This document shows, in pieces, positions 3,003-44,590 of a DNA stretch of 64,000 nt. Source of the DNA: Mytilus trossulus (Eukaryota). Under the pieces are notes generated by a model, which worked only from the letters and a program-made list of their open reading frames with translations, had not been told where the DNA came from and did no database searches. Made by a program: the position numbers and the translations under genes. The stretch covers positions 13,392,001-13,456,000 of the forward strand of contig NC_086377.1 of the NCBI RefSeq assembly GCF_036588685.1, written 5' to 3'. Numbering within the stretch: position 1 is the stretch's first letter; each line of letters opens with the position of its first letter.

Positions 3003-3010
3003 TATAAAAG
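3003..3010 (+). promoter_or_regulatory. Candidate TATA box of gene A
   Basis: TATAAAAG about 55 nt upstream of the candidate ATG and donor of exon 1. Confidence 0.4.
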
Positions 3011-3062: not shown

Positions 3063-3080
3063 ATGTCTATATTTTTTCAG
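3063..3080 (+). CDS. Gene A candidate exon 1 (MSIFFQ, start of signal peptide)
   Basis: ATG TCT ATA TTT TTT CAG|gtaagt is a consensus phase-0 donor. Splicing to 11481 gives MSIFFQISLVFLVGFTLIPSQ, a plausible signal peptide. It requires an 8.4-kb intron. Confidence 0.55.
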
Positions 3081-4944
3081 GTAAGTTTAAAGTTTGACGG
3101 TAATTGTCATGTGCCAAATAAATCTATTCACGCGCGTTTAATGTCTATTATTATTGACGGACTTCTTTTTTTTAGGCATTTTACTTTAAGAATATTCTTA
3201 ATGATGTGATTTAAACATCATGTGACACATATGTACGATTATATAATTTATATTATCTGATTTCCTTAATCGCCAGTGTGCATGTATATCAAGCATTATA
3301 ATTTTAGTTTTGATTTTAAACTGTAATGTCTGTTTGTTTTGTTTACACATTAATGTTAATATAAAGGAATTGTATGCGACTGTCATACAAGTGAGAGGTT
3401 CATCTAGTAATAAAACCAGGTTTAAGCTACATGAGGTAATGCTTGTACCAATTCAGGAATATCTCAGTTGTTTTTCCACATGTTTGACGTGTTTGAGCTT
3501 TTGACTTCGCCATTTGATAAAGGAGTTTCCTGTAATTTCCTTGGAGTTCTGTTATTTTGTTGGTTTTTTTTCAGTGAGAAATTGTCTTTTTGTTAAATAC
3601 AGTTCCAATCAATTAAGTTCAACATTTGTCATACTTATATATCAATCCACAATTTACGTCCCACGTAACGTCACCTTGTAAGGAAAACAAACTAAAATTT
3701 GAAAGTTCAAAACTTCAAATCAAATTTAACAACGGGAATAATTGACCTCCTATATAAGATTCAAATATTAAAACTTCTGTTGAGAATTTTTTTTAATTTC
3801 TTTTTTGCATTAGTTTGATACTGTTTCTTTTTAGGGGTCGTCGTCAGTGCATTATTTAATCATATATAAATTTTTTAAATTTAAATTGATAGTTAACAAT
3901 AGGATAAAAACGTGTTGACATTCATTTTCCGCAATTTAAAAAAATCAAAAGCTCTAATTTTGTTGGTCCCGAACACGTTCATATATTCAAATTTAAATTA
4001 GACTCTTTTATGTAAGGAGCTTAAATAACTACTATTTAAACAGTTTCTCTCAGTCACGTTTGTGTATTAAATAGTAGATGACAGTTAACTCAAAAATAAG
4101 CATTGTGACACAGAAATGTCTTTTTGATTTTTTCTTAACGTGAATCATCGAGGTTCGGATATAAAATTGCATTATAAGGACGTTTTGAGGTAGGTGTTTT
4201 CAATATTTTTTTATACTTACAAATTACTGAAGAAACGCGAACTATCGCACCTGAGACGAGCACACTTACCACACCAACACCTGATTGTGAAAAAACAAAA
4301 TTAATAACCAAATTTACCAGAAACCATATAGCTTATGATATGAAAACAAAACTTAATAGTTAAACCGGAGAAATACGTTCAGTGCTACATGGTGAGCAGA
4401 ATCTGATTACTCGTTCAGAGCACCTCAAATCACCCCAGTTTTTGGAAGGAATTTGTATTGCTAAGTCTTAAGTTTTCTATGTTGTGTTTTGTGTACATTT
4501 CCTGTATTTTTGTCTTTTTTAGCCATGGCGCTGTCCGTTTCCTTTCAAAAATATATCTGCATATATAATGTTCAACTACTAGTTGTAATGTTAACAAGAC
4601 ATTGTGTGGGAATTTTTCGATAGCCAAAAATCATTTGCCAAGATTCAGGAATATTTAAAAAAAACCAACATATTATCAAAAATCAATTTAAATTAAAAAA
4701 AGTTTACAAAATCTATAAAATCAAACGCCCGGGAACGCAATATCTTTGGAACGAATGGAAAACATATTATAACGATAGTAAATGTATTACTTGAGGACAA
4801 TGGTTTTTAAACCTGGGTTTTCTAGCTAGCTTTCGAAAAAAGAAGCATACAAATCTTGCTGAAATCTTAAACTTCATTTATATATTTACAATTTGAAACC
4901 AGCTAAGTTTTAGAGACCCAATGATGAAAAAGATAAAAACTAGG

Positions 4945-5260
4945 TTGAATGAATGAACGAATTAATCTTTATTGCAAAGCATAGACATGCTATGGCAAAA
5001 TAAACAACATATATAACATAATATAAAACATGAATAGACAACAGAAAACAATAGTATAATACAATGACATATAAATTATGTTATGAGACTATATAAGATC
5101 GAATATTCCATGCAGCTTTAACATAAATACATAATTTGATCGTGAGAGACTTACTAGAAACTAGGTTCACCATATAGCTTTTAATAATGAACAAAACTAT
5201 GCTGCTTGAAAATCTATTTAAGTTTATAAATCAGACGGAAAATATATTAAACGAGCCCGA
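4945..5260 (-). mobile_element. 3' end of a CR1/L2-like LINE
   Basis: The minus strand ends ...KLCIYVKAAWNIRSYIVS*, then a short UTR, AATAAA and a (CATT)n tail. Confidence 0.5.
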
Positions 5261-6061
5261 TTAATGTACAAGACAAAGAAAGAACAAATAAGGTATAAAG
5301 CAGTTAACGGCAACATCTAAATTACAGACTCCAACCATTAAACTGGTACTAACAGAACTACCTATACATATGAAAATAGAAATAACTACAGTAAAATAAT
5401 ATTGGATAATGTACCCGGACTCAATCAATGTGTGTATGAGTAGCAATTCTTATATGACTTGCCTCTTTCGCTTCGTTAACAATATCGTGATAACTTTCTC
5501 GATATATCCATTCTTAGCGCAAAATTCAGGGATATACAGTATACATCTTATACAATGTTATAACGGATTTTACAATTTACGTCCAACTTAAATTCACATT
5601 TATTTTAACATATATGCAAACGCTATGCCGATTTCGCTGTGTAAAATTTGCAATTGAAAAAGCTTTACTTTTATTATAATCCTTGTGCATAACTAAAAGA
5701 GGGAAAATAGGAACTTTTTTCTTTTAGAATGTTTCGAAACAAATCTATACGATATTATGCTGGGCCTACTTTTTGCTTCGGGAATGCCTTTGCGGTTGCC
5801 AAGTAAAAGAATACAACAATTGTTTTCTAGTTATTCCAGTATTTGGTTAAGTCGGGCGTTTGATTGTGTCAGATTTAAGGGACATCAACTTTTTCAAATT
5901 ACCATGAAATTTAACTTTTTATACGGATATGTTTGAAAAAAGTTAGAATACATGCCATGTGATTATCCGCATTCAAAATTGTAATGAATCAAACACAAAA
6001 CAAGCAATCAATCAAGCCTGACAATTTCAAACTGGATTCTAAGTCTAATTTGCCTTAACAT

Positions 6062-6139
6062 TGATTGATTGATTGTTGGTTGCTTTACGCCGCATTAGCA
6101 CAAAAAGGCTATATCGCGGCGAGAGCTAATTCGAATATT
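6062..6139 (-). mobile_element. Extremely 5'-truncated (78 bp) copy of the I-group LINE
   Basis: Matches the LINE 3' end at 34108; 16-bp TSD TAATTTGCCTTAACAT at 6046-6061 and 6140-6155. Confidence 0.9.
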
Positions 6140-6872
6140 TAATTTGCCTTAACATAAATACATTTATCATGCTTTGGATAAAGTAGAAATCAGACCTTAT
6201 ATTACATATAGAAACTCTCTTAACCTAATCCTTTCACAACAAATGAAAGGACTTTATAATTGAAGATTTCCTATGCGTGTACCCATTAGAAAACAGAAAA
6301 TCTATAGTCATTTGATATATTGTATTAATACCTGTCTTTGTCTAAAATAGATATAGGAAGGTGTGGTATGAGTGCCAATAAGACAACTCTCCATCCAAGT
6401 CACAATTTTTTTAAATAAACCATTATAGGTCAAGGTATGGTCTTCAACACGGAACCTAGGTTCACCCCGAACAGCAAGCTATAAATGACCCTAAAAATTA
6501 CTAATGTGAAACCATTCAAACGGGAAAACCAACTGTCTAATCTATATAAAAAAAACAGAAACACTTATGAATCACACAAACGACAACCACTGAACATCAG
6601 AATCCTGACTTAATATGCCTGCATTAGAAAATGACAAGGAAATCGTATTGGATAATAAGGTCACAGATGCAACTGGTATAGAAGTTTATAACTTAGAAAA
6701 TATATACTAGTATGCCACTTTTGCTACGTCTTTTGTAAAATGTCTCTCTCGTCGAGGTAAAACATTTTCTTCTATTCTTATAATAATTTGTTCCATATTG
6801 AGTCTTGTGAGTGCAATGTCTTTTATTTATGACTGTCTTACCAATTGGGCATACCACTTATAAGTAGTTCTA

Positions 6873-7495
6873 AGGGCATACGATACAGTTACATGAGAGG
6901 TAATGATGTTGCTAACGTCAATTGTTATTTTCGCGACGTTAAACTATGGCTTATCGAGAAAAGATTCAGTTTTTGACAGATTTTTATCATTCAAACTTAT
7001 TTAACTTGAAAACGAGTGCATGTGCCCCTTTTTCGAAAATGCCATTTGGTTTGATATCGTGAGAAGATTATTTGTGCTAATTTTCTTGAAAACGTTAATT
7101 GTGCGATTTTTTTACATTGATAAATATACAGCAAACATTATGGGTTTGTTTTCTACATTCATGAACATTTGATAAATATGAGTTATGTCTGAATAAATTA
7201 TGTATAAATATTAAGGATACTTATAAAATACAGAAACTACAAATCATTTAACAAAAAACAATTTATGCGTACCTTTTAAAACAAAAACGTTATGACTTTC
7301 TTTCGAAAGGAAAATTACGGCCACAAATCCGAATTTTGACCAAATAAATAAAATTTAAACCTCATTTTACAAAAAAGCAGCACATGAAAGTATATTTTTT
7401 ATAATATATTTGAATTAATTACTCAGGTAATAATAGTCTATATGGACATTTTTATCAAATGTAAAAACGGGATCAAAACTGTATGTTATGCCCTT
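6873..7495. mobile_element. Non-autonomous TIR element (MITE) at a TTAA-like site
   Basis: AAGGGCATACGATACAGTT ... AACTGTATGTTATGCCCTT inverted ends; no ORF. Confidence 0.7.
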
Positions 7496-8139
7496 AATGA
7501 CGAAACGCACTTCTATTTAAGTTGGACGTAAATTGTAAAATCCGTTATAACATTGTATAAGATGTATACTGTATATCCCTGAATTTTGCGCTAAGAATGG
7601 ATATATCGAGAAAGTTATCACGATATTGTTAACGAAGCGAAAGAGGCAAGTCATATAAGAATTGCTACTCATACACACATTGATTGAGTCCGGGTACATT
7701 ATCCAATATTATTTTACTGTAGTTATTTCTATTTTCATATGTATAGGTAGTTCTGTTAGTACCAGTTTAATGGTTGGAGTCTGTAATTTAGATGTTGCCG
7801 TTAACTGCTTTATACCTTATTTGTTCTTTCTTTGTCTTGTACATTAATCGGGCTCGTTTAATATATTTTCCGTCTGATTTATAAACTTGTGTAGTTCGTG
7901 TTGTTTCTTAATTATTATTTATAACTGTTGATGTAAATGTCCTTTGGTTTTTGTGAGTCTTTGTTCACTCCTTGGTTTTGATTGTTATTGTCTATCATAA
8001 TCTGTGATTTCGAAATTATATTACACAACTGTACAATAGAATGAAGTGTATCAGTTTTCTAAATGTGCTTTTACATTATATAAAAGTTATAATAAATAAA
8101 GAAGGTGTGCAGTTTGTATTAACCGTAAAAAAACCATTT

Positions 8140-8445
8140 TTAACCCCACCACATTATTTATGTATGTGCCTGTCCCAAGTCAGAAGCCTGTAATTCAGCG
8201 GTTGTCTTTTGTTTATGTGTTACATATTTGTTTTTCGTTCATTTTTGTACATACATAAGGCCGTTAGTTTTCTCGTTTGAATTGTTTTACATTGTCTTAT
8301 CGGACCCTTTTATAGCTGTCTATGCGGTATGGGCTTTACTAACTGTTGAAAGCCGTACGGTGACCTATAGTTGTTAATGTTTGTGTCATTTTGGTCTTTT
8401 GTGGATAGTTGACCCATTGGCAATCATACCACATCTTCTTTTTTT
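8140..8445 (+). repeat. Abundant interspersed repeat (other copies near 6350-6610 -, 18900-18995, 28645-28830, 42180-42490, 54530-54780 -)
   Basis: Shared motifs GTGCCTGTCCCAAGTCAG, GAAGGCCGTACGGTGACCTATAG and CATTGGCAATCATACCACATCTT. Confidence 0.75.
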
Positions 8446-11400
8446 ACTTTGATTTTTGTTGTTCTGCAGCTGTATGTCAAATTATGTTTGGATAAGTAAT
8501 TGTCTTATTGTTTGTACCATTACAAATCAATAATGGTCAAAATTATTTACAACTATAACCAGCTGACTATAACACAGCCAATCTTATAGTTTCCAGACGT
8601 TTACCTCTTTTAAAGTATATATTTTTATGGAACTCTTTGAAATTGTACATTTTTCCGGAAGAAAAAGTTATATTTATAATTCCCCATAGTGTGATGCGAT
8701 TCAAAAAGTTTTTGAGGAATGTTTTAAATTTTTTTAGGGAATATTTTGTATACTTTAAAAACAATTTCTTATCGTCACATTATACTTCATTTTGTGAGGT
8801 AAAAAACTAATTTTTCAAAACTTTTTTTTAATGAAATCATCAACTTTATTTTTTAATTAAATTCTAAAGTTAACTACACATTACATCAGTTTATGGTGTC
8901 GTAAAACAACCGCGAGATATTCCCTTCGAATAATGCCATCATATCGCTGTCGCCCTATGACACACTTGGTTTCCGGACAATTACTTTGCTTTAACATTTT
9001 TAAGTAAATGGATCTTTTTAAAATTTTACAAGAAAGTTCAATATCACAAACGAAATGTTGGAATGGTACTGGGTTTCATGGTACCTTTTGGTAACTATTT
9101 GGAAATAAGGGACGAACAAGGGGTCAAAATCACAGTTTCTGGACAATAACATGTGTGTAAGTGTATGGTCCTCTCTGAAATTGTACTACAAGGTTCCATT
9201 TCACAGAAGGAAGGCTAGAATTGAGATTGATGTAATTGCCCCAAAAGTTTAGAAAGTATGCGCCAATAAAGGCAATAGAAGTATACCGGTGTTTAAAAGT
9301 CTTAAATTGATTGAGTGAAAACAAATACGGGTAACAAACTAAAATCGAGGGAAACACATCATAAAAAAGAACAAAATAAAGGAACAAAAGGAACACCGAT
9401 TGCAACGAAAAACAAACGCCAACTGACAAAAAAATCAAACTCTTTGATAACAACTGCCCTATTCATGACTTGGTACACAATATTTTAAGTAAAAAACCGG
9501 TGGGTTGATCCTGGATTAATGACAAGTCAAACTTCTCGCTTAATGGCAATTTAAAACAATGAGAACACTACGTGACAGAAATACAGCACTAACACGTAAA
9601 ACATTCATCACAGAGAAAAGCACAAATGAACATTGGAGAACAATAACATACATATTTAATCAACGAAAGACACCAATTGGGCCAAAATCCAGCAATTTTC
9701 TAGTTTCCAGACAAAACCTTGACGTGTTTATGGAACTCTCTGAAATAGAACATTTTGCCTGAAGAGATAATAATTTTCAAAGATTCAAAAACGTTTGGAG
9801 GGATTTCTTTTAATTTGGGTGGGATGGAGGTTCATACCTTTTTTTCATCTAAATTTTCCAAAATATCATATTCTAAATTAAACATATTCTAGGGGTTTCC
9901 TTAAAAAAACATTGATAATTCTGATTTATATACAAAAGCAACAAATACTGATACGACAGGAGATACACTATTAACCAAGTATTGCGCATTATATCCCAGT
10001 ATTGTTCAATTACACAGTATTACGCAATAGCAAGAAATCTTCAATTTAAAATGAATACAAATCGTGTAACCAATTTCAGTGGGATATGTTTAAAGTCTTT
10101 ATTTTTGAAGGTTCTAATCTTGTATTTCTATATTGAATATTGACCCTCTTTTTGAATTGGTCTCTTTTGAGGTCCAAAGTGTCCGGAATCATTTTTTTTT
10201 TAATTCATCGGACACTGAATGAGTTGGCTTCTTTGATATGCCAAATTTGATTGTGCATATAGATTGAATGATTTGGTCCTGATTTCCAATGAGTCCACAT
10301 TAAGAATTGAGTGGTCCAAAATTAAACTTGGTATGATGTCAAATAAAATAAAAATGGTGTTTTTTATATGCTGACTCAAATTTTGTTTAATTTTGGATAT
10401 CAGACCATACTAGGTAAATTGACTGACCCATTTCAAACATTTGTGATCTTCGTATTTGTGTCAAAACATATAATATGTCAAAATATGTATTACAATCCAA
10501 ATTCAGACCGTATAAAGCTTGTATATTTTATCCAAACCTCTACAAACTGTGCAGGGTTCGACAACTGCGGTCGTATGAGGATGCACTTGGTTAAGCATTG
10601 CCTTACCTTTTTTGTACTGCTTTGATATTCTTCTGTTTATTACACGTTTCGAAGTTTTTTATATTCACATAATAACATAAGAGGTACTTTCATAACTGTA
10701 ACAGAACACGTATCAATCTGGTCATCCGGGCATTTATAATTAACTTATAGAAATTCTTTGTTTGGCTTGTGGATTATTTATGTATCTTATGTTGGTTTTT
10801 AATTATACATTTGTTATACAGCATTTGTTTGATTTACAATTAAAGCAAGATTTTACATTCTGAATCATATCACACTCTCTTGTCCTAATTGTAATGGAAA
10901 TAAAATTGAAATAGAAATAAACCTCACTGACCAAATGTATAGAAACGGATAATGACCAGTGTGTTAAATGTTGCAAAAGGTACGAAAATTATACAACCTT
11001 TTGTACTTTTATTGTTTTCACAAATTATTTAAACATGTATTGGTGAAGCAAACAATTGATAGAATTTATAAGCATTGACCATGTTTTGCAGAGGAAAGGA
11101 TGAAAAGTTAAAATTGACAGAAGAATCTAAAGCTAAATTTGCCTGACAGTTCCAATCTCAGATTTGTAAAAACTGCATTATATGCGATTTACAGTTTTAC
11201 GCACACTGCAGTTTGTATAGTCCTTTATTAACTACCACTGCAACGGCACCATCCATTTGTTACATATTACCCCAAATAACATTAACTGTTTAAATCTAAA
11301 ATTAATGTTTTATCAGTATGGTTTTTAATTCTATCGTTTTTGTATATAGCATTAAGTTGGATCGTTGGAAGCATGATTGCGGACCACCTAAGATTCTTCG

Positions 11401-11480
11401 TTTTTTTGGTCGGGTTCGTGTTGCAAGTATTTTTCTATGAATTGTTTTTTTTTATACTTTTCTGTGTCGTTTTGTTATAG

Positions 11481-11706
11481 ATATCATTGGTGTTCCTTGT
11501 GGGTTTTACCTTAATACCTAGTCAACGGATATTTCCTAATTTAGATGGAATAAATGGTCAACAAGTTATTTCAAATATTAATGGGATCAGAACTGGTACG
11601 AATATAGTGGATGACCAAGAAATCTTCACTGACCGTAATGGAATATTCGTGAGTAATGAAGTTATTGACGGGAGAGTTTCAGGCTGTCCTAGTTCACAAT
11701 CATGGG
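11481..11706 (+). CDS. Gene A exon 2 (signal peptide core, Ile/Asn/Asp-rich region)
   Basis: ttatag| acceptor and G|gtaag donor (phase 0 to 1). ISLVFLVGFTLIPSQRIFPNLDGINGQQVISNINGI...GCPSSQSW is homologous to gene B exon 42642-42834. Confidence 0.85.
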
Positions 11707-11742
11707 GTAAGGAAACAACTGAAATATGATCTAGTTTTGATT

Positions 11743-11952
11743 CTGTTGACCAACTTATATTCGTGGATACTTTATTTGGCGTTTTAGCCCTTTCTAGTCC
11801 ATTTCGCGGCGATTTAATTTAGCGAATCTTAAATTTACTTGATGAAGTTAAGTAAGAAATAATCAAAGTTTTACCAAATTCGCGACAATTTATATTCGCG
11901 ATATTTTCTACTCGCTAAAAAAAATCGCTCGCAAAAGTAAGTTGGTTTACAG
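11743..11952. mobile_element. Short MITE in intron 2 of gene A
   Basis: CTGTTGACCAACTTA ... TAAGTTGGTTTACAG inverted ends with internal TTCGCG motifs. Confidence 0.55.
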
Positions 11953-12479
11953 TGTATATGTTCACGTACCAATTATTCAAACTGTAACTATGTTTCACGG
12001 AAACAACAGCTTTTTATGCTGATATAATAAAAGTAAAATAATTAAGGAGTATCAGTATCATTGCAAAAGAGTACATTTAGACAAACAAAGACTGTACCTG
12101 GATTTCCTTCATTTGTTGTTTTATTCACAGATTATCTTTAATCTTGCATTAAAACAGTTGGTGTTATCATTAATATATAACTTTTAAAACAAAAAACTAA
12201 TAAAACAAAAGAGCAATAATGTCAACGAATATGTGAGTAAATTCTTATGGCTGTTTTTTTATCAGGTTATCATTTATGAAACATGTATTTAAATATTCAC
12301 ATTGCTCTAGCGTAAAACTGTTACCAAGGTTTACACTAACACATACAAATAAACAAATCTGTTTGAGAAAACCAGTTGAGGACTATTACAAAATCAGTTA
12401 AATGTGTTTTCGGTTGCATCCTTGATACTCCAAAAATATTGTTCAAATAATAATACGTTTCATTCATTTTTTTTTTAAG

Positions 12480-12863
12480 ACGGTGCTTTCTTAGGTGGAT
12501 TCGCAATGGGAAGGTTACTCGCGCCAATGAGTATGGCGGACGGAACCATGATGACAACAGGACAAATAATGATTATGAATTTTATGAACATTTTAACAGG
12601 AAGTCCAATGGCCCCAGTGATTTGCCAACCACAATCAATTTCAACCACTTGTCCCCAGCAACCAACCACGACGCCTTGTCCGCTACAACCAGCAACGTCA
12701 ACTTGTCCCCAACATCCAACTACGACGCCTCGTCCCCAACAACTAAACTTGGCGCCTTGTCCCACTCAACAAACTACGACGCCTTGTCCACCACAACAAT
12801 TAACGACGCCTTGTCCCCAACAACCAAATACAACGCCTTGTCCTACACCACCTCCAGAAAGAA
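12480..12863 (+). CDS. Gene A exon 3 (Met-rich hydrophobic block plus CPQQPTTTP-type repeat stalk)
   Basis: ttttaag| acceptor and A|gttagt donor (phase 1/1). DGAFLGGFAMGRLLAPMSMADGTMMTTGQ... is homologous to gene B exon 43659-43859. Confidence 0.9.
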
Positions 12864-13123
12864 GTTAGTTTTCATAATATTTTTGCTTCAATGCATGATA
12901 GTTGCTTTTACATTTGGTATTCCTTTTACTTTACACTTCATAATCCGTCTACAAACGCAAGCCATACAATTGCAGATGCGTTTAAGAATACTGTTTTGTT
13001 TTGTTTGTGATTTTGTTTCAGATACATGTATATGGAATTCTCTGGTGTTATCAATGCTCGGTGCTCATACAAAATTGTGCCCGGTGACCCTTGATTTCTT
13101 TTCATAATTTTATTACATATAAT

Positions 13124-14040
13124 CAAGGAGGTTATATTAGAAGGAGAGAGGACAAAAGACGATAATTACACATAAAATGTTACCGACTTTTCTGTAAGTG
13201 GGTGTTAATTAGTTGAGATCGACCCTGTCACAGAGGGAGATTTGTCCTAATTACATACCCGAGTAAGAAAGGAAACACCCGAGGTGTCATAAACTGACCG
13301 GATATACAGTTATTTAAATGTTAATAAGATTTTTTGTGAAATTTTTTATAAAATAATTAATAATCAAAATTTTATGTTAAAAGTAAACTTATTACCAATA
13401 GAAATGAAACGAATATCCTTCTCATTGTCGTCAATGTTAATATCAACAGTCATAACAGAAAGTCACTTTTACGTTGTTCCCGATAAATTTCTCTATGTTT
13501 CAATTGTTAATATTCCTTCCGGTCGTTACCGGTCACCATAACTAAAGTACTTTGCATATTCGTATATTTTCTATGATTATTACCTGCCAATTCTCATAAG
13601 CAGAAAGTGACAGGTGAAGCGAAAATCTTTGTTTAAAGCAATGTAGTGTTGAATAAAAATCGCTCAATAACTTTCCTTTAAATCCTCATAACTTTGTAAT
13701 TTCTTTCTCTTTTTTCACCGTAGACAGACGATTGATTTTGAAATTGCGCGTCCGATCGTTTTACGTATCATAAACACCTATACACTGTATTGGTACCGAA
13801 AATACACCTGAACTTTAATGACCCAGCCACTGATAAAAATCACGTGACATGTGCGATTTATCTAATGGCCCTAACTACTCGCGGTAACAGCCCGGTACAT
13901 CAGAGGCCCATGTCAAGTGGGTGCTAAACATGTCGGTTTCTTTATAATTTTACCATTTTTCTCTGATCGAACTGCTATCCTGGGGATGCTGATTTTGTAT
14001 CAAGCAGAGTGTTCACTCTCCTTCTAATATAACCTCCTTG
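13124..14040. mobile_element. Non-autonomous P-element-like transposon in intron 3 of gene A
   Basis: Perfect TIR CAAGGAGGTTATATTAGAAGG; 7-bp TSD ATATAAT (13117-13123, 14041-14047). CANRG termini with a 7-8 bp TSD fit the P superfamily. Confidence 0.75.
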
Positions 14041-14470
14041 ATATAATATATGAAAATATATAATATATAAAAAAAATATCCTGAAAATCCTCGTTTCTAT
14101 TTTTTTTTATCACTCGGCTATCAACAATGAGGTTATGAATTCGAAGCACGCACGCGTTAGATGCATTCGACTCCTGATTGATCAATTAATTACCTTGTTA
14201 ATCTTTCGAAATTATGGAAAAAAGATAATGTATGATTGTCAATTGTATAAAAATCTGCTTAATAATATGTCTTTACAGTTTATTGCCCGCCAAATTGTAC
14301 ATGGCTTTTATCTCAAAATCAAGGACACGGAAAAGCATTGAAGTTTTAACGTTATTATATGTTTACAATGTATCCTTTAAGTTGATGACTGTCTTTTAAA
14401 TAGCTTGTTAATTTGGATTTAGATGCAAATATCCTTACAAAAGCATAATATGATGTGTTATCCTTTTTAG

Positions 14471-14556
14471 CTGCTATTTGTCCTCAAGGTTGGATCTTAT
14501 TTGAAGAGTTATGCTATAAGCTTTCTGCTGATGATAAAGTCTGGGATGATGCAAAG
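14471..14556 (+). CDS. Gene A exon 4 (C-type lectin domain N-terminus)
   Basis: tttttag| ... |gtata. TAICPQGWILFEELCYKLSADDKVWDDAK fits the long-form CTLD pattern CPxGW...CY...W..A. Confidence 0.9.
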
Positions 14557-17360: not shown

Positions 17361-17472
17361 ACTGAATGTGGAAATGAAAATGCTATCCTGGCTGAACCAG
17401 ATACTATAACAGAGCAAGGCTTTCTGAAACTTTTGAATCTGATACTTGTACCTGAAACAAACTGTCGACGTA
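17361..17472 (+). CDS. Gene A exon 5 (CTLD middle)
   Basis: tactag| ... A|gtaagt. TECGNENAILAEPDTITEQGFLKLLNLILVPETNCRR fits C.....LA.....EQ.FL, and phases match both neighbours. Confidence 0.85.
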
Positions 17473-18612: not shown

Positions 18613-18832
18613 ACTATTGGATTGGTGGAAGAGATTCCAATGATCCGCCATTATTAGACTTCAGATGGACCTCAAGAGGTGTAAATGTAAACGATGGAGT
18701 TACAGATTGGTTTATGGGGGAACCGAACGGTGGACCTTACCCTGAATACTGCACGGAAATGCGATCAGATTTCGATTACAAATGGAACGACCATCCATGT
18801 AGAGAAACAAACAGATATATCTGTCAAAAAGA
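18613..18832 (+). CDS. Gene A exon 6 (CTLD carbohydrate-binding part, EPN and WND motifs)
   Basis: NYWIGG...W...GEPNGGPYPEYC...WNDHPC...YICQK; tgtcag| acceptor and GA|gtatgt donor. Confidence 0.95.
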
Positions 18833-19396
18833 GTATGTTATCCTTACTGTTATCTCTCTAATAGGTCGTGCATATTGAAACCATTATCATACAGTTAACA
18901 TGCCGTATGGTGACCTATACTTGTTAATTTCTGTGTCATTTTGATCTCTTGTGGACAGTTGTCTCATTGGAAAACATACCACATCTTCTTTTTTATATAT
19001 GCTTGTATGATATGGGATTTACTCATTGGTGAAGGCCTTATGCTGACCTAGGCTTGTTGATGATCAATGATTTTCTGCTGTTTGTTTGTTCTTTGGCCCG
19101 GTTGTTTCTCTTTGACACCTTCTAAATTTCAATTATCATTACTTTTTTCATCTCAATAAGAACATAAACATGAACCAAAAAAATATAAATAGCATTTGCA
19201 TCTGTCTGTATTTTTGTGTGCTGTGTTGAGCATTTATCACAAAAGTTTAAGATAGAAGGCACGTGTGTGTGTGAAAACAAAATTTTTCATAAGAGTTTGC
19301 ACCACATTATAATTATTCTTTGATTTCCTGTGTAAAGCTTGTACCACTGCATCAAGTGTGATATGATATTTCTCTTCTCGATAAAGATTTCAAATT

Positions 19397-26150: not shown

Positions 26151-26171
26151 CTTACAATAACACCACACCAT

Positions 26172-34400: not shown

Positions 34401-34508
34401 TCAATATACTAAAATTCTTGACTAAAGCAAATTGAGTATATACAAAATAAAAATCAACAGTAAAATAACGTGATAAAAATTAAAATCGATTTAAATATAA
34501 TAACATTT

Positions 34509-37500
34509 TTATATTCTATAATAAATTCCAATTTCTTTTAAAAAAGTAACAATACTTGTAAATGGAACATTATTAAATAAATCATACATATTATTGACAT
34601 TGAAATGCTTCTTACGAATATCAGCAAAGTCAATACAATAAATTAAAACATGTTTAATAGTATACTTGCAGTTGCAAGGAACACATTGTGGTTCATCTTC
34701 ATTTTTTAAAAGATATTCGTGTGTTATTCTAGTATGACCAATACGACATCTAGTAATAACACACTGATCTTTTCTGCACATAATATTATTAAAAGGTTTG
34801 CCTAAATTAGGTTTATTTCATGCAATTTATTATCATCTTTTTTACTCCATTTATTTTTCAATATATTAAAAACATATTCTCTAATATTAGATTTAAAATC
34901 AGTATATGGTATATTACAGTTAGATAGAGGGTCACCCAGGGCATTCTTTGCCTCAAGGTCTACAGCTGTGTTTCCAAGGATTCCAACATGACTCGGAACC
35001 CATAGAAATATTATTTCTTTCAGAAGAATTTTTAAATTCCTCATTACATATAAAATTTTCAGGATTGTTGGGTTTTTAATTTTAGTATTTCGTATAGCTT
35101 GTAAGCATGAAAGTGAATCCGAACATATAATAAATTTGGATTTATCTGAAGAAGCAATAAATTTCAAAGCCAAAATTATTGCTTCTGCTTCAGCAGTAAA
35201 GATGGATGCATCAGATGGCAAACGGAGGGTTGCAGCTCTGTCCCTGAAGACAGCAGCAGATGCAACTCTGTCACCATCTTTTGATCCATCAGTATAGACA
35301 GTTGAAAAATCTAGATAATCGTCTTTAATTTCAGCATAGTGTTGCTGAATTAAAAGAGGATTTGTTTTATTTTTATTGTGTTCACGGAGATCAAATATCA
35401 TTTTTGGTTTGGGAAGTTCCCATGGAGGACATTTGCAAGTTTGAACTTGAGCAACAGATTTTAAATCAAAAGAAGCTAAATGTGGTTTTAAACGTAAACC
35501 TAACGGAGGAATTTTATTTTCATGTTTTGCAAAAATATCTTCATAAATCGGATTAAAACACAGCTGTAGGCAGGATTATCTGAATGCGCTTTTAGTTTGA
35601 CAGCATATTGAAGTCCAAGCTTTAAACGTCTGTCAGTGAGTGAGTGCTCATCAGCCTCTACATACAGACTCTCAACTGGTGAGGTTTTAAATGCGCCAAG
35701 ACAGAGACGCAAACCTTGGTGATGCACAGCATCGAGAATCTGTATGAAGGACTTCCTTGCAGAGCCATAATCTAGTTTAGATCTAACAAGAGATCTATAT
35801 AAATTGAGTAAAATGTTGCGATCAGCACCCCAGTCAGTGCTGCCGACAACTTTTAAAATATCTAAAGCTTTTAAACTTCTCGCTTTTAACATTTTGATAT
35901 GGGGTAGAAAGGTTAACTTTTTATCGAAAAGTAAACCAAGAAATTTGGTTTCATCAACCATTTTAATTGGGTTGCCGTACAAAGTTAGTTCTGGATCAAG
36001 ATGCAATTTTCTTTTGTTACAAAAATGCATCCCGACCGTTTTTGAAGTGGAAAATTTAAAACCATTTTCCGAGGCCCATTTTTCAATTCTTCCAAGACAT
36101 AATTGTAATTGTCTTTCAATGTTATTCATATTTTTGCCTCTGTAACATATTAAAAAATCATCAACGTACAATGAACCTTCAATATTACTTTTTAAAACTT
36201 CAACAAGGCTGTTGATTTTAAGACTAAATAATGTAACAGATAAAATACTGCCCTGAGGGACACCCATCTCTTGCTCATAAAGATCAGACATGGTCGAATT
36301 AACTCTAACATTAAATTGTCTGTTAGAGAGAAAATTAGAAATAAAATTAGGCATATTGCCTTTCAACCCCATATCAAATAGATCTTTTAAAATACCATAT
36401 TTCCATGCAGTATCATAGGCCTTCTCAAGGTCGAAAAAGACCGACACCACATGCTCATTTTTCGCAAAACCATTACGGACAAATGATTCGAATCGAACAA
36501 GATGATCAAGAGTACTGCGACCCTGTCGGAATCCACACTGGATATTGGCTAATAGCCCATTGGATTCCAGGAACCAAACAAGGCGATCATTGACCATCCG
36601 TTCGAGTGTTTTACAGACACAACTGGTAAGAGCAATTGGTCGATAATTAATAGGATCCGTATGATCTTTACTTGGTTTTGGAATAGGCACGACGGTTGCA
36701 AGCTTCCAGATTGATGGTAAATCACCAGATTCCCAGATGTTATTCATGAGCTGCAAGAGAGCTTCTAGCGAGGAATCTGGCAAGTGTTTTAAGAGTTGGT
36801 AGTGAATATTATCAGGCCCACAAGCTGTATCATGGGCTTTTGACAGAGATGTTTTAAGTTCTTCAAGAGAAAATTGTTTATTATAATTTTCACCATTTTT
36901 TGATTTAAAGTTTAATTTATTTTTTTCTTTTTGTTTTTTAACTTTTTTTTCCGTCGTTGGTTGTGAACCGTCTTTCAGATTTTTTACGGTCACCTATGGC
37001 TTGATCACATGCGTCATCAAACCAAGAGTTACTGGGATGTTTTGGATTTGCCGAGGTCTTAGGAATAGTTCTGTCAGCAATTGACGTTAGAACTGTATTA
37101 AAAGTTAAAATTGGATCTTGCACAGTCCCAAACATCTTTGACTGAAGTTCCGCTCGACAGAGATTCTCAAACAAGGACCAGTCCGCCTTGTCAAGTTTCC
37201 AACGTGGTACTCTCTGTTGGGCAGAATTAAAAAGATGTTCAAGTACTATTGGAAAATGATCACTTCCACATAGATCATCATGAACACGTCATGAATAATC
37301 CAGAAGCAGAGAGGGATCGCATATAGTGATATCAATAGAAGAATAAGACCCGTTTCCAGGATGAAGATACGTATTAGATCCATCATTAAAAATGCATAAT
37401 CCTTCTTGAGAGACAAAGTCCTCAATGATCTTACCTTTGGCATTATGAGTCTTGCTACCCCGTAATGGATTGTGGGCATTGAAGTCGCCCATAAGTATAA

Positions 37501-37878
37501 ATGGTGAGGGTAATTGATCAGTGAGGTTTTTGAGTTTTGCTTTATCGATAATTGAATTAGGTGGAATATATATCGAACATAATGTAATTGTTTTGTCTAA
37601 TGATAAACGAATTGCAACTGCTTGCAGATCCGTTGTGAGTTGGACTGTGCTATGAATGACGTTTTCCTTCACAAAAACGGATGATCCGCCTGCAGCACGT
37701 TCATCTACCTTAGAAAATGTACTATACATGTTGTATCCTTTTAAAGATACGTTGTCACTTTCTTTTAGATGAGTTTCTTGAAGACAAAATGCAATAGGTA
37801 AAAAGACTGAACTAGAAGTGTTAACTCGAGAAGATTTATTTTAAGACCTCGGCAATTCCATTGGATTATATTTGTCAT
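34509..37878 (-). pseudogene. LINE ORF2: AP endonuclease, reverse transcriptase, RNase H, C-terminal Zn motif (frameshifted)
   Basis: MTNIIQWNCRG, LQETH, GDFNAH (APE); YRPIAL, DLEKAYD, PQGS, YVDD (RT); YTDGS, AE..AI, SDS, WVPSH.GI.GN (RNase H). Broken into several ORFs. Confidence 0.92.
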
Positions 37879-37889
37879 TATTTAATAAA

Positions 37890-39391
37890 AGAAGGGCGAA
37901 TGCTGTCGAGTTTGCCAGCATTCTTATTTCGCTCACCCTGAGATCGTGATCTTTCGGGTGGCGGAACACTTTCAGTTTCCATTTCAGTTTCGATGATAAG
38001 TGTTGAAAATCTGTTGTGCGAGGAGAGTAGTCGATCTCCAGGACTACGCGCAGCTGGTGTTACTCCGCCTCGACCCCTACCCCGCGACCTCGAATCAGAA
38101 GACTTCTGAGAGGATGTATTTCCTGGCTTCTTTTGGACATCCTTCTTTTCTTGAGAACGAAGAGGAGATGGGGCTCTGGTAGACTGTGTACTGGACGAAG
38201 AAGATACCTTCTTGGATGCAGATGAAGGCAGACTTTTGGAGGTGGAAGAATCATCTATGTCACTGGGAAGATCCCAGACAGATTCACCGCTCCAATTGTG
38301 TATTTCTACTGTTTCTTTTTATTTTTTTTCTCATTTTTTTTTGGTGATGATAGTGAGCTCTGTAGGGAAGATTGAGTTGACTGAGTACTGGTTTTGGAAG
38401 ATATTGGTTTTCTTGGAATTAATATTCTATCGGTAGGTTCTGTTTCAACAGGCAGCATTTTAAAATTGTCCGCATCAATTGGCCAAGTCATGCGAGTTTG
38501 TGTATTCTCGTGACTGAATGAGCGGACAACTTTGCTGGCGTACGATGGTCTGTTTGAAACAAGGAGATCATTCGAAACAGAAGCTATCTGTTTAGCTTCT
38601 GGGTAACTAATGTTTCTTTCTGTTTTAATTTTAATTATATTTTTTTCTTTAAGGTAAACAGGGCAGTCCCTAGACGATGAAAAATGGTATTCACCACAGT
38701 TTACACATTTAGAAGATTCAGAGTGACAGTTTGTTCCCTCGTGTCCTTCGTCAGAACACTAGAAGCATCTCTGATTACCACGACATTGTTTGCTTCCATG
38801 ACCAAACTTTTGACAAGTAAAGCATTAAATTGGGTTTGGGATAAACATGTCAACTCTGATTCCGAAGCAACCTAAAGTAATAGATGGAGGAGGAGTTGGA
38901 GTTCTAAAGGTCAAAAGATAAGTATTTAATTTGATTATATTTCCATTCTTTTTAATTTGAAATCTAATAACATTAGTTACACCTTGGCTTGAAAGTTCCT
39001 CACCGATTTCTTCCACGGTAAGGTCACCAAGGTATTGACTTCTGTCTCGAATGATCCCCTTACAGCTGTTCAAACTGTTATGAGGAGAGGCAGAAACAGG
39101 AAAGTTTGATATTGTAGACATTGTAAGTAAATTTGTTGATTGACTTTTGTTGGAACATTCAACCAACAAATTGCCAGATCTCATTTTTGAAACTTTTTTA
39201 ACAGTACCAGCAACGCTTTGAATTTGTTTGTGAATTACAAAGGGCGATATTTTTGAAATTGTTTTTTCTTCTGTTCCTTTTATTACAATAAATCTGGGCC
39301 AACTGTCATCTTCCCGACAGGGCTCTGAATCATCACATTTTCTTTTCTTATGCATTAAAGCTGATTTAGAGGGTTTGTTTTGTTGTGCCAT
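37890..39391 (-). pseudogene. LINE ORF1 (gag-like, three CCHC knuckles) with in-frame stops
   Basis: MAQQNKPSK...PNPI*CFTCQKFGHGSKQC...CF*CSDEGHEGTNC...CVNCGEYHFSSSRDC. The 3' boundary is approximate. Confidence 0.85.
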
Positions 39392-39993
39392 ATGAAAGGA
39401 GAAAGATTCACCATTCTTGCCATCCACCCACCTCGGAGTGCCTACAAGGGCGATGCTGTGTTTCCGTGGCGAACCGGGATCGAGTGCTAATGCTGAAAAC
39501 GAGCTCCATATATAATGTAGCTGGTCCTCAAAATCAGCACCCAAGATCCACTGCGGAAAGCACCAGATGTTCCAAGAATAGTATACTCAAGCAGAGCTTA
39601 TCCATCAAGCGAAAAAGAAAGCGTACCACTTGATTGACCCATGAGCCATCGCCTTCTTCAGTTATCCAAAATATAAATAGCTTAATTTAAAATACATGTG
39701 TATATTATGAAAATTGTTACAAGACAGCTTATTGTTGAGGATTAACTGAAGGGCTCGACATGACCAGCCGATTGATCGAACCGGGTCCATCCGACCTCCC
39801 GTTTAGATGATTTCGAAGCCAAAGCAGCTTATTGAACTATAGTCTCGTCCGTCCGGGTATTTTCTGACCGTAAGGAGTCTGGCTATAGCCCTCATCCACA
39901 AGGATCTCGTCAACCACCGACACGGGTAGCAACCCACGGCAAACGGGTTGGAGAGCCTATTTTATTTAAAACATCGGGCATCTCACGATGTTC

Positions 39994-40139
39994 GGATCAC
40001 TTTAGTCTGGTCTCTACCCTTCGACCTGTCCAGCATGGGTAACCCTACCAGGAGACGAAGCTCCAGCTGGCATAGCTCTTGGGGTCACTGAGACACGCAA
40101 GCCCTCCGACCACGGCAAGGATAGCGATCCACCGGAGGG
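39994..40139 (-). ncRNA. HDV-like self-cleaving ribozyme at the LINE 5' end
   Basis: P1 CCCTCCG/CGGAGGG; P2 GGATCGC/GTGATCC; P3-L3 CTATCCTTGCCGTGG; extended P4; J4/2 CTAAA. It begins at the first base after the TSD. Confidence 0.8.
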
Positions 40140-41757: not shown

Positions 41758-42641
41758 GATTCTAATAGGACAAATACGGCAATTATTTTGGATCGAAGCG
41801 CTCTAGGTGATGGCATTATTTGCCGTTCCACTATATACACGCACTATTAAATTGACGTAAAGTAACGGAGCAAACTGAATAAATGATGATGCTTAAACTA
41901 TTTATAATAACATATTTAGATAATTTTAGATGAATCTAATTATTATTGTACTTATATGTCTCATATATATACAAAAACGGCTAATATAACTCATTTTAGC
42001 ATCATTTATTAACGTTTCCTTGTTGTGATGATTTTCCGTTTCACAAGCGTGTATTTTCCCGTAAATTGCTTATATTCTGACGTCATTGTTCTATGACGTC
42101 GAGTCGCTCATTCATTAAAAAACATATGACGTGGTGGTACAATGGGAACAGCCCATGAAATATATGGGGGGGGGGGGGGGGGGTTAAACCCGCAAACATG
42201 TTTAACCCTGCTACATTCTGTATATATGTGTCTGTCCCAAGTCAAGAGACTGTTAATCAGTGGTTGTTGTTTGTTTATTTGTAACATATTTGTTTTTCGT
42301 TTATTTGTTGGACGAATGTAGTTCTCTCGCTCGAATTTGTTTACATTTTCAATTCTGGACCTTTTATATCTGACTTTTGGGTATGGGCTTTGCTCATAGT
42401 TGAAGGCCTTACGTTGACCTATAATTGTTAATGTCTGTGTCAATTTGGTCTCTTGTGGAGAGTTGTCTCATTTGAAATCATACCAAATCTTGGTGTTTTT
42501 TTTCTTATAATTGCTTTCAATGCTTTTTTAATTCAGAGTGTTCATATCTATTTTTTAAACATTCATCAAAGTATGAAACAATATGAAATAAATATTGTGT
42601 AAATATTAATATTTGTAAAAAGAATTTCCGATTTACTTTAG

Positions 42642-42834
42642 ATGTTACTAGTGGTTTTGATTGGTTTTACTATGAAAAGTAGCCAGCAAGTAGTGACCAA
42701 TTTAAATAGAATAGATGAACAACGAGTTATTACTAATATAGATGATATAGAAGATCAAGGAGCAATTGGCACCATCGATGAAATTTTTTTAATCAACGAA
42801 GAAAGAGTTTCCAGTTCACCAACAAACACTTGTG
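42642..42834 (+). CDS. Gene B first identified coding exon (signal peptide, acidic Ile/Asn/Asp region)
   Basis: ctttag|ATG ... G|gtgaga. MLLVVLIGFTMKSSQQVVTNLNRIDEQRVITNIDDI... is homologous to gene A exon 2. An upstream exon was not identified. Confidence 0.85.
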
Positions 42835-43175
42835 GTGAGAACTAAATTGATTAATATTCTGTTAGATTTGTATTTGAAGAATATTCACACATTCAGTATT
42901 TATCTATAGCTGGAAATTATTATCAATCCCGATTAATCGCGGCTACTTACCAATAATTTATGTTCTTGTTGATAATAACCTGTCCGTTAAGTCTAAATAT
43001 ATATGTAATGTATTGTCGAAAGCAACGACGGTAGTTTCATTTTTCAAGTAGTAAATCTTTAATATCTTTGAATCTTTTGTGTTACTACCTGTGTTAACAT
43101 TAATCTAAACATAAAGTTTTAACCAGAGTTAATAATCAGAAAATTTATTGGCCGAATAATTATATTCCACAAAAG

Positions 43176-43400
43176 CGGCACATTAAGGTTAAACATTTTC
43201 TACCTCAGGCAAATATTACCTTAGCTGTATTTGGCAAAACTTTTAGGAATTTTGGTTCTCAATACTCTTCAACTTCGTACTTTATTTTGGCCTTTTAAAC
43301 TTTTAGGGATTCGAGCGTCACTGATGAGTCTTTTGTAGACGAAACGCGCGTCTGGCGTGTGTACTATATTTATTCCTGGTATCTATGATGAGTTTATAGA
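43176..43400 (+). mobile_element. Retrozyme/Penelope-derived fragment carrying a hammerhead, in the gene B intron
   Basis: Flanking sequence recurs at 47941-48010 (-) and 48190-48280 (+), where the hammerhead is decayed. Confidence 0.65.
43315..43358 (+). ncRNA. Minimal type I hammerhead ribozyme
   Basis: GCGTCA CTGATGA GTC-TTTTGTA-GAC GAAA C-GCGC-G TC|TGGCGT: intact core, stems I and II, palindromic short stem III; predicted cleavage after 43352. Confidence 0.88.
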
Positions 43401-43658
43401 TATCACAATCGGAATTTTGTTCCAATTGAAGAGCATTTTGATGCAGCAAACCTGAATATGAACATGATGAATATTTGATGCATTTTTTCATCTTCAAAGT
43501 ATATGTATATTTTTAACTGTGAACTCTCCTCTGTTATGTGCTTTAGGGTGTCTAATATCAAAGCATCAATTTGTTATTACGACATTGACATTTGGGTTTA
43601 CCCTGTTATCCTTGTCATAACATTGACTTTGTGATAATACTTTATTGATTTTTTTAAG

Positions 43659-43859
43659 ACGGTACTTTTCTTGGTGGATTTTTATTTGGAAGATTATTGG
43701 CACCAATGGCTATGGCGGACGGATCAACGATGGCAACGGGACAAGTTATGATGATGACACTGATGAGCATGTTGACAGGAGTGCCACAGACTGCAGTACC
43801 AATGGTATGCCCACCCCAATTAACCACCATGCCTTGTCCATCAACACCGCCTCAAAGAA
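43659..43859 (+). CDS. Gene B Met-rich/stalk exon
   Basis: ttttaag| ... A|gtaagt (phase 1/1). DGTFLGGFLFGRLLAPMAMADGSTMATGQVMMMTLMSMLTG...CPPQLTTMPCPSTPPQR. Confidence 0.9.
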
Positions 43860-44309
43860 GTAAGTTAAAGTCATTTAATGTAAAAATCATTAATTAATTG
43901 TTTGGTACGGCTGAAATCAATAGACCTTAATTGCCTTTAATGTTGGTATTTATAATCCATTGGTCGTATATTAGACCGTACTTTTTTTATTAGTTCCGCA
44001 TCCAAAAAGTCAATATCGTCTAACTAGCTGAGACAGTACCATTATTGTACAATGTTTCGAATAACATTGTTTTGGGGCATCATTAAATGACTGTGCCCAC
44101 ACACATGATATGATCTGAGATAAAATGTCCTTTACACGGCTTTTTCCCCATTTTTAATTGAATTTTTCTTAAATATTTCTTTAGTTAGATTTTGGTACAT
44201 GAACCATTAAAAATCCTACAAACAAGCAAACATTAAACTTGGGAAACACTGATTTGACGTTATTAATATGTATATGTTTATGATTAGGTTTAACTTTTAT
44301 TTCTTACAG

Positions 44310-44590
44310 CCGTCAACCGTGTTATACTATGCGAAGGAAATGTGCCGGCCTTTATCAGTTGCGATTCACAAATAAATATAGTAGAAGCTGTATACGGTCG
44401 AGTAGATCGCAGTATTTGTCCAGATGATAGAATATTAACAACAAGCTGTATGTCAACTACGTCAGATGCTTTAGTTAAAACAGATTGCAATGGACAAACA
44501 ATTTGTCAATTAATGGCTAATAATGCTAAATTTGGTGACCCCTGTCAAGGTACATACAAATATCTAGATGTCACTTATACATGCATTTAG
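44310..44590 (+). CDS. Gene B terminal exon: SUEL / rhamnose-binding (Gal_lectin) domain; spliced CDS 675 nt = 224 aa
   Basis: LCEG...SC...I..A.YGR...IC...SC...C.G...C...N..FGDPC.GTYKYL.V.Y.C with 8 Cys; AATAAA at 44644. Confidence 0.95.

What the first reader, a model, noticed from the sequence alone, without database searches (positions are those of the whole stretch)
3063..44590. Modular secreted-lectin cluster: one N-terminal scaffold fitted with unrelated lectin heads (C-type vs SUEL) at the same phase-1 intron
Seen: genes A and B share two homologous exons with identical splice phases (0-1, 1-1), ending CPTPPPER|T and CPSTPPQR|T. In A the next exons encode a 4-exon C-type lectin domain; in B a single exon encodes a SUEL domain. 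Established: these folds are unrelated. EPN/WND C-type domains typically bind mannose/glucose-type sugars with Ca2+, while SUEL domains bind rhamnose/galactose without Ca2+. Inference: exon shuffling swapped the sugar-recognition module on a shared secreted scaffold, analogous to collectins versus ficolins but with a non-collagenous stalk I do not recognise. The products might co-assemble.
Basis: partly seen in the sequence, partly recalled or inferred. Interest (0 to 1): 0.9.

Follow-up and report, generated by a model that had tools for sequence, protein, structure and literature searches.

The report
Mussel lectin genes sharing one stalk
Two neighbouring mussel (Mytilus trossulus) genes carry the same mussel-only N-terminal region but end in unrelated sugar-binding domains (C-type versus SUEL), a clean case of exon shuffling in a small, undescribed family whose shared region has no known function.

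Summary
Gene A (3063-18878, +) and gene B (42642-44590, +) share two homologous exons with the same phases (0-1, 1-1). At the same phase-1 boundary, A continues into a C-type lectin domain and B into a single SUEL exon. The C-type domain has EPN and WND motifs and spans 3 exons, not 4.

The genome is Mytilus trossulus. It holds six loci with the shared block: A, C and F with a C-type head, B and D with a SUEL head, and E with an unverified head. Gene models from five Mytilus species show the same junctions. A profile search of 1.84 billion proteins found the block only in Mytilus.

On a tree of the shared block the SUEL-type rows form one clade (97/99) among C-type rows, which fits a single head swap. 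SUEL domains occur at 54 or more places in this genome, and the nearest ones checked are 3'-terminal phase-1 exons. Ka/Ks is 0.37 (B-D) and 0.53 (A-C).

Not shown: transcription (no RNA run was listed), oligomerisation or co-assembly (fold and complex predictions gave nothing), and sugar specificity. B has no leader exon or TATA box in this window. I found no paper describing the family. It is a new variant of a known kind, of moderate interest.

The parts
3003..3009 (+). TATAAAA box of gene A, 60 nt upstream of the ATG
   Evidence: The block 2946-3095 is 75% identical to the matching region of paralog C.
3063..3080 (+). Gene A exon 0: ATG plus 5 codons (MSIFFQ), donor gtaagt, phase 0
   Evidence: Equivalent exons: MSLIFQ (paralog C), MSLNFQ (paralog D, used in XP_063436184.1), MSFNFQ (P0015).
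11481..11706 (+). Gene A exon 1 (phase 0-1): rest of the signal peptide, then an acidic Asn/Asp/Ile-rich stretch with a weak 6-residue hydrophobic period
12480..12863 (+). Gene A exon 2 (phase 1-1): Gly/Met-rich block (12480-12610), then a Cys/Pro/Thr linker. The linker includes a 27-nt (9-aa, CPQQPTTTP-like) tandem repeat of 7.3 copies at 12648-12843.
14471..14556 (+). Gene A exon 3 (phase 1-0): start of the C-type lectin domain
17361..17472 (+). Gene A exon 4 (phase 0-1): middle of the C-type lectin domain
18613..18878 (+). Gene A exon 5 (phase 1, includes the stop): end of the C-type lectin domain with EPN and WND, plus a 14-residue hydrophobic tail
   Evidence: (Lectin_C, E=1e-7)
42642..42834 (+). 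Gene B exon 1 (phase 0-1), homologous to A exon 1. It begins with ATG directly after an AG acceptor-like site.
   Evidence: 89% identical to residues 1-64 of P0001
43659..43859 (+). Gene B exon 2 (phase 1-1): Gly/Met-rich block plus a short Cys/Pro linker
   Evidence: 92% identical to residues 66-131 of P0001
44310..44590 (+). Gene B exon 3 (phase 1, includes the stop): complete SUEL lectin domain
   Evidence: (SUEL_Lectin, E=2.5e-20); 89% identical to residues 133-224 of P0001
44644..44649 (+). AATAAA polyadenylation signal of gene B

Best explanation
A and B belong to a small family of secreted lectins found only in Mytilus.

Each member has four parts:
- a two-exon leader and signal peptide;
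- an acidic Asn/Asp/Ile-rich stretch;
- a conserved Gly/Met-rich hydrophobic block bracketed by cysteines, followed by a Cys-Pro-Thr linker of variable length;
- one sugar-binding head.

The head is a C-type lectin domain in three exons (A, C, F) or a SUEL domain in one terminal exon (B, D).

Shown here: the exon anatomy; the homology of the shared part; the two head types at the same phase-1 boundary; both architectures recurring within the genome and across five Mytilus species; and purifying selection.

Inferred:
- After duplication of a C-type member, a 3'-terminal phase-1 SUEL exon replaced the three C-type exons once, before M. coruscus split from the M. edulis group. This is classical phase-1 exon shuffling.
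- The proteins are secreted.
- The cysteine-bracketed block and hinge-like linker hold several chains together, so that weak single-site sugar binding becomes multivalent.
- A would bind mannose/glucose-type sugars with Ca2+ (EPN/WND) and B rhamnose/galactose-type sugars. The family would then offer two specificities on one chassis for mucosal or haemolymph recognition.

The confidence given applies to the architecture and the single head swap. For the assembly role alone I would put it at about 0.35.
For: - Exon boundaries, phases and intact frames.
- Pfam heads; whole models.
- Six loci with the block in the genome. Paralog C has e0+e1+e2+three C-type exons, D has e0+e1+e2+SUEL, and F has the same five-exon layout.
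- A profile search of 1.84 billion proteins returned only Mytilus proteins as credible relatives, with either Lectin_C or SUEL_Lectin after the block.
- Those models place exactly one residue (the split codon) between the exon translations.
- The tree of the block has the SUEL rows as one clade (97/99) inside a 97/92 clade with A- and C-type rows; one change of head is enough.
- SUEL matches at 54 or more places in the genome. The nine nearest loci outside the family (L021-L030) carry the whole domain in one exon followed at once, or within a few codons, by a stop. The six of these I read by eye (L021-L025, L027) have a phase-1 acceptor.
- Ka/Ks is 0.37 (B-D) and 0.53 (A-C). Only the exons of A and C still align.
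- Cysteine counts: B has 3 in the shared part plus 8 in SUEL, an odd total. One Cys before the block and the PCP motif after it are nearly invariant.
Against: - No transcript evidence was obtainable. No RNA run was listed, and the only Logan fragments are unspliced genomic pieces.
- No M. trossulus protein for A, B or C appeared in the protein collection.
- B lacks the leader exon and a TATA box.
- Nothing supports oligomerisation. AlphaFold2 gave mean pLDDT 39, the complex test gave no answer, and there was no Pfam, PDB or Atlas relative.
- The root of the tree is assumed to lie on the divergent F/E branch. E's head is unverified.
- F's C-type domain is no closer to A's or C's than to many other C-type domains in the genome.
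- The A/C/SUEL branching order is unresolved.
Confidence: 0.7

Rival explanations
1. The window's copy B is a 5'-truncated, weakly expressed or silent duplicate. The working SUEL-type gene of this genome would then be D, 137 kb away, and the A/B contrast in this window would be partly a relic.
For: - No exon 0 and no TATA box anywhere in 19000-42641.
- A 5.8-kb LINE, a second LINE fragment and a 2.4-kb satellite lie upstream.
- B and D align through their introns at about 77-88%, close to the 80-88% seen over the exons.
- No M. trossulus protein for B in the collection, while D has XP_063436184.1.
Against: - All three exons are intact with canonical splice sites, a stop and AATAAA.
- Ka/Ks against D is 0.37, and pN/pS in the SUEL exon is 0.27.
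- Exon 1 begins with ATG, and the M. galloprovincialis model VDH97519.1 (89-92% identical) starts at that same ATG.
Confidence: 0.25
2. The shared region is not an assembly stalk. The Gly/Met-rich block could be a membrane-active or hydrophobic-ligand-binding segment, a Met-based Cu(I)/metal site, or a spacer or pro-region removed after secretion.
For: - The block is 43 residues with 8-9 Met and 7 Gly, mean hydropathy about +0.8, and is flanked by Gly/Pro.
- Met at three positions and one Gln are invariant or nearly so across 15 sequences.
- No coiled-coil or collagen repeat is present.
- From my own knowledge (a lead only): Gly/Phe/Leu-rich hydrophobic stretches occur in fusion peptides, and MxxM-type clusters in Cu(I) sites.
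Against: No evidence favours any of these readings over assembly. The conserved flanking cysteines and the hinge-like CP(x)nTP linker fit inter-chain disulfides at least as well.
Confidence: 0.3
3. A and B form one transcription unit. The single leader exon at 3063 would be spliced either to A's exon 1 or, by read-through, to B's exon 1, which also starts in phase 0 after an AG. One promoter would then give two lectins.
For: - B has no leader of its own, and its exon 1 keeps an acceptor-like TTTAG in phase 0.
- Both genes are on the same strand, 24 kb apart.
Against: - A has its own stop and AATAAA signals at 19564 and 19644.
- 24 kb of LINEs and satellite lie between the genes.
- In M. galloprovincialis a SUEL-type model has its own leader, MSFNFQ (P0015).
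Confidence: 0.05
4. The SUEL architecture is ancestral, or heads were exchanged several times, rather than one C-type-to-SUEL swap.
For: The root is assumed, E's head is unverified, and F's C-type domain is not specially close to A's or C's.
Against: - The SUEL rows form one well-supported clade, and both divergent lineages with a scorable head are C-type.
- The three C-type exons have the same layout in A, C and F.
Confidence: 0.1

Closest known systems
Collectins versus ficolins (vertebrate soluble defence lectins)
   Same: One kind of N-terminal region is combined with unrelated sugar-binding heads. The proteins are small and secreted, with cysteines near the N-terminal part.
   Different: There are no Gly-X-Y collagen repeats and no predicted coiled-coil neck, and oligomerisation is not shown. 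Here the two head types sit on demonstrably homologous exons within one genus. RefSeq's name 'collectin-12-like' (XP_052059157.1) reflects only the C-type domain.
Bivalve secreted single-domain C-type lectins (expanded repertoire, PMC10140915)
   Same: A signal peptide plus one C-type domain with EPN (or QPN) and WND motifs, in a lineage-specific, tandemly duplicated family.
   Different: An extra N-terminal region of about 130-190 residues has no Pfam match and would be invisible to domain-based surveys. That paper does not mention SUEL.
SUEL / rhamnose-binding lectins (sea urchin egg lectin, fish RBLs; Pfam PF02140)
   Same: Full-length domain with 8 Cys and the YGR, DPC and KYL motifs.
   Different: A single domain placed behind the Mytilus-specific region, rather than alone or in tandem repeats.
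Mytilectins: MytiLec-1 versus MytiLec-2/3 (PMC4882566)
   Same: Mussel lectin genes that differ by the addition of a whole module.
   Different: There a constant lectin gains an aerolysin-like effector. Here a constant non-lectin part changes its lectin.
Phase 1-1 module shuffling of extracellular domains (Patthy's rule, from my own knowledge)
   Same: The head is exchanged at a phase-1 intron, and the donor module is a phase-1 exon that is common in the genome.
   Different: Nothing in mechanism. This is a compact, datable example.

Membership tests
C-type lectin-like domain (Pfam PF00059) | Significant match to the domain profile | tested here: met
   Last exon of A alone: E=1e-7, 33.1 bits against a cut-off of 22.6. 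Whole models P0013 and P0009: E=5.6e-16 and 2.7e-17.
C-type lectin-like domain (Pfam PF00059) | Ca2+/sugar site motifs EPN (or QPN) and WND, and the long-form cysteine pattern | tested here: met
   EPN and WND read in 18613-18878. A has 7 Cys in its three head exons: 6 canonical plus one extra before WIGG.
C-type lectin-like domain (Pfam PF00059) | Ca2+-dependent sugar binding | not testable with these tools
   Needs protein and glycan assays.
SUEL / rhamnose-binding lectin domain (Pfam PF02140) | Significant match over the whole profile | tested here: met
   E=2.5e-20, 73.1 bits against a cut-off of 31.4, profile positions 3-80 of 80.
SUEL / rhamnose-binding lectin domain (Pfam PF02140) | Eight cysteines and the YGR, DPC and KYL motifs | tested here: met
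   Read in 44310-44590.
Collectin | Collagen-like Gly-X-Y repeats and an alpha-helical coiled-coil neck before the C-type domain | tested here: not met
   The exon translations contain no Gly-X-Y run. There is no Pfam collagen hit. The region before the head is a Cys/Pro/Thr linker.
Collectin | Trimer-based oligomers | tested here: inconclusive
   The complex prediction gave no answer and the monomer model was poor.
Transposable element or dispersed repeat (as a trivial source of the shared exons) | Many copies in the genome | tested here: not met
   Only 5 credible matches to e2 and 3 to e1 in 1.3 Gb. The sixth locus, F, was found with the P0009 query.

The most novel reading that the evidence does not exclude
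The cysteine-bracketed Gly/Met-rich block with its Cys-Pro hinge would be a previously unrecognised, genus-restricted assembly domain. It would link chains carrying different heads, so mussels could build homo- and hetero-oligomers that combine Ca2+-dependent mannose-type and Ca2+-independent rhamnose/galactose-type recognition in one particle.
Probability: 0.12. Interest if true: 0.7.

Novelty: new variant of a known kind. Interest (0 to 1): 0.45.

Why it matters
Bivalves lack antibodies and depend on very large lectin repertoires. How new recognition molecules arise in them is mostly described as duplication of single domains.

This locus shows another route with unusual clarity: the same homologous exons, the same intron phase, two unrelated heads, both architectures kept under selection in several species, and a plausible donor class of terminal SUEL exons.

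It also flags a conserved region of about 45 residues that domain databases do not see. Surveys based on Pfam would therefore file these proteins as plain single-domain lectins. If that region proves to be an assembly or effector module, it would be a new building block for multivalent lectins. If not, this remains a tidy textbook example of exon shuffling.

Tried and rejected
- RNA evidence: the look-up of sequencing runs (rna) on 42600-44650 listed none, so read laying could not be used.
- The search for homologous proteins with A exon 2 alone found nothing. This is expected from its length window.
All searches were run exon by exon or with database proteins, so I could not look up whether RefSeq holds exact models of A and B.
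- Structure: AlphaFold2 of P0001 with a 12-row family alignment gave mean pLDDT 39, and even the SUEL domain was unfolded. The model is not usable, and no fold search was run on it.
- Complex prediction (A block against B block): no answer, score 0.02. This is neither for nor against binding.
- The ESM Atlas and a PDB sequence search with the block profile gave nothing. Pfam on the shared exons gave nothing significant.
- P0007, a 3504-aa hit of the profile search, is an unrelated Gly/Thr/Ser-rich repetitive protein and was rejected.
- I looked for decayed C-type exons downstream of B and D as a trace of the swap and found none.
- I looked for the shared scaffold upstream of the nearest non-family SUEL exons and found none.
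- E's downstream exons look C-type-like by eye but give no Pfam hit, so its head is left unverified.
- The 6-residue hydrophobic period in exon 1 is weak (autocorrelation 0.12-0.31). I do not claim a beta-helix.


Full report
**What is in the window.** The window is AT-rich invertebrate DNA (GC about 0.30-0.40). Exact matches to RefSeq proteins on contigs of 88,129,055 and 113,486,924 bp identify the genome as Mytilus trossulus. The window is C5:13,392,001-13,456,000.

**Gene A (+ strand), read from the sequence.**
- TATAAAA box at 3003.
- Exon 0, 3063-3080 (MSIFFQ, donor gtaagt).
- Exon 1, 11481-11706 (phase 0-1).
- Exon 2, 12480-12863 (phase 1-1).
- Three C-type lectin exons: 14471-14556 (1-0), 17361-17472 (0-1) and 18613-18878 (phase 1, with the stop).

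**Gene B (+ strand).**
- Exon 1, 42642-42834.
- Exon 2, 43659-43859.
- A single SUEL exon, 44310-44590, with the stop; AATAAA at 44644.

All splice sites are canonical and all frames are open. Two corrections apply: the C-type domain is in three exons, not four, and B has no leader exon.

**Is the similarity real?**
- A exon 2 finds B exon 2 at E=1.3e-13 in a six-frame search of the whole 1.3-Gb genome, where only five places match credibly.
- Exon 1 of A and B align at 39% identity, E=3e-11 pairwise. Only three places in the genome match.
- The shared part is therefore a low-copy gene segment, not a repeat.
- Pfam gives Lectin_C on A's last exon (E=1e-7) and SUEL_Lectin on B's last exon (E=2.5e-20). 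It gives nothing for the shared exons.

**The family in this genome.** Fetching the other matches showed the following loci.

| Locus | Position | Layout |
|---|---|---|
| C | C5:20.12-20.13 Mb, minus | leader + e1 + e2 + three C-type exons |
| D | C5:13.59 Mb, minus | leader + e1 + e2 + one SUEL exon (90% identical to B's) |
| F | C5:18.94-18.95 Mb, minus | divergent, same five-exon layout, QPN-type C-type domain |
| E | C1:65.87 Mb, plus | has the block; downstream exons look C-type-like by eye but give no Pfam hit |

Each architecture therefore occurs at least twice with intact exons. The leader exon and its TATA box are conserved in A and C, and the leader exon alone also in D.

**The family elsewhere.**
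- A profile of exon 2 (alignment A1) was searched against 1.84 billion representative proteins. It returned seven Mytilus proteins plus one unrelated repetitive protein.
- With two region-restricted searches and cluster look-ups, the members come from M. galloprovincialis, M. trossulus, M. coruscus, M. californianus and M. edulis.
- All are unnamed or carry automatic names (collectin-12-like, MRC, NCAN, C-type lectin PAL-like).
- After the block they carry either SUEL_Lectin (P0001, P0002, P0003, P0011, P0015) or Lectin_C (P0004, P0005, P0009, P0012-P0014, P0017-P0019).
- B's three exon translations match residues 1-64, 66-131 and 133-224 of the 224-residue P0001 at 89-92% identity. One residue is left at each junction for the split codon.
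- A's exons are collinear with P0012 at 64-72% identity.
- These are gene predictions, some from RefSeq. They agree with the junctions but are not transcript proof.
- No M. trossulus protein corresponding to A, B or C was in the collection.

**Direction of the change.**
- A maximum-likelihood tree of the exon-2 block (16 rows, 66 columns) puts the five SUEL-type rows in one clade (97/99).
- That clade lies inside a clade (97/92) with the A-type and C-type rows. F and E are outside.
- If the root lies on the F/E branch, the C-type head is ancestral and one swap suffices.
- The order of A, C and the SUEL clade is unresolved.
- The SUEL domain matches at 54 or more places in the genome. At the nine nearest loci outside the family (L021-L030) the whole domain lies in one exon, followed at once or within a few codons by a stop. 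The six of these I read by eye (L021-L025, L027) have a phase-1 acceptor, and L021 has it at the same residue as in B. This is the kind of cassette that can replace a phase-1 head.
- No decayed C-type exons remain downstream of B or D.

**Selection.**
- Summed over exons, Ka/Ks is 0.37 for B against D (0.27 in the SUEL exon) and 0.53 for A against C.
- A and C align only in exons and their immediate flanks, whereas B and D still align through their introns.
- Both head types have therefore been kept as coding sequence, with the relaxed constraint usual for recognition proteins.

**What the shared part looks like.**
- After a plausible signal peptide comes an acidic stretch: 7-10 Asp/Glu against 3 Lys/Arg. 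It has a weak 6-residue hydrophobic period.
- Next comes one Cys, then a 43-residue block with 8-9 Met and 7 Gly. Invariant positions are G, L, P, G, three M, TG and P, plus a nearly invariant Q.
- Then follows a Cys-Pro-Thr linker that recalls an antibody hinge.
- In A the linker is expanded by a 27-nt repeat of 7.3 copies.
- B has 3 Cys outside its 8-Cys SUEL domain, an odd total.
- This fits inter-chain disulfides and a role in holding chains together, but nothing here shows it. AlphaFold2 gave pLDDT 39, the complex test gave no answer, and no Pfam, PDB or Atlas relative exists.
- A membrane-active, metal-binding or spacer role is not excluded.

**Doubts about B.**
- No leader exon or TATA box was found in the 23.6 kb between A and B.
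- That interval holds a near full-length LINE on the minus strand (endonuclease and reverse-transcriptase ORFs), a second LINE fragment and a 48-bp satellite.
- B's exon 1 starts with ATG, as does the M. galloprovincialis model VDH97519.1. Another M. galloprovincialis model, P0015, has both the leader and this Met.
- B may therefore start at 42642, or it may be a weakly expressed copy.

**Literature.** Five searches of the held library, and a reading of the bivalve C-type lectin survey (PMC10140915), found no description of this block or of the paired architectures.

**Verdict.** The exon-shuffling reading is well supported by comparative evidence. Assembly and co-assembly remain inference. 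This is a new variant of a known kind, of moderate interest.

Noticed in passing
window 5220-5593 and 7515-7888: A perfect (100%, 374 bp) inverted repeat pair, 1.9 kb apart, inside intron 0 of gene A. It could be a foldback-type element or an assembly artefact.
   Followed up: no
window 28992-31406: A 48-bp satellite of about 50 copies, 89% matches, between the two LINE copies.
   Followed up: no
window 34299-40139 (minus) and 26171-28309: A near full-length non-LTR retrotransposon with Exo_endo_phos_2 and RVT_1 ORFs and an RNase H-like (RVT_3) part, plus a 97%-identical partial copy. Another note of the scan (s1-830084) places an HDV-like ribozyme at its 5' end.
   Followed up: partly
window 44707-45067; also the 3' flank of paralog D (L015/L016): A 32-bp tandem repeat of 11 copies directly after B's poly(A) signal, conserved in the same place after D.
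   Followed up: no
window 58310-59515 (+) and 60357-61286 (-): A MADF-domain ORF next to a DDE_Tnp_4 transposase ORF (E=8.4e-35), the gene pair typical of a PIF/Harbinger transposon.
   Followed up: partly
window 8131-8437, 18902-18994, 42194-42491, 54526-54750: A dispersed short repeat (79-88% identity). It lies just after A's stop codon and just upstream of B's exon 1.
   Followed up: no
L031 (G000:C5:62240401-62250400) with L021: The SUEL exon nearest to B and D outside the family (60% identity) is preceded within 3 kb by open frames rich in Leu/Glu/Lys heptad-like sequence. This may be a coiled-coil stalk carrying a SUEL head, that is, the same head on another kind of stalk.
   Followed up: partly
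paralog D, L015/L016; protein P0002 (XP_063436184.1): The RefSeq model leaves the SUEL exon at an internal GT after ..GDPCPG and continues in exons about 6 kb downstream. It thereby loses the last strand and the last Cys of the domain. The genome encodes the complete domain followed by a stop.
   Followed up: partly
window 18831-18875 and paralog C: A short hydrophobic tail after the last Cys of the C-type domain (YVILTVISL.. in A, FVIGTAISL.. in C, similar in P0005 and P0012) is conserved. Its role is unknown.
   Followed up: no
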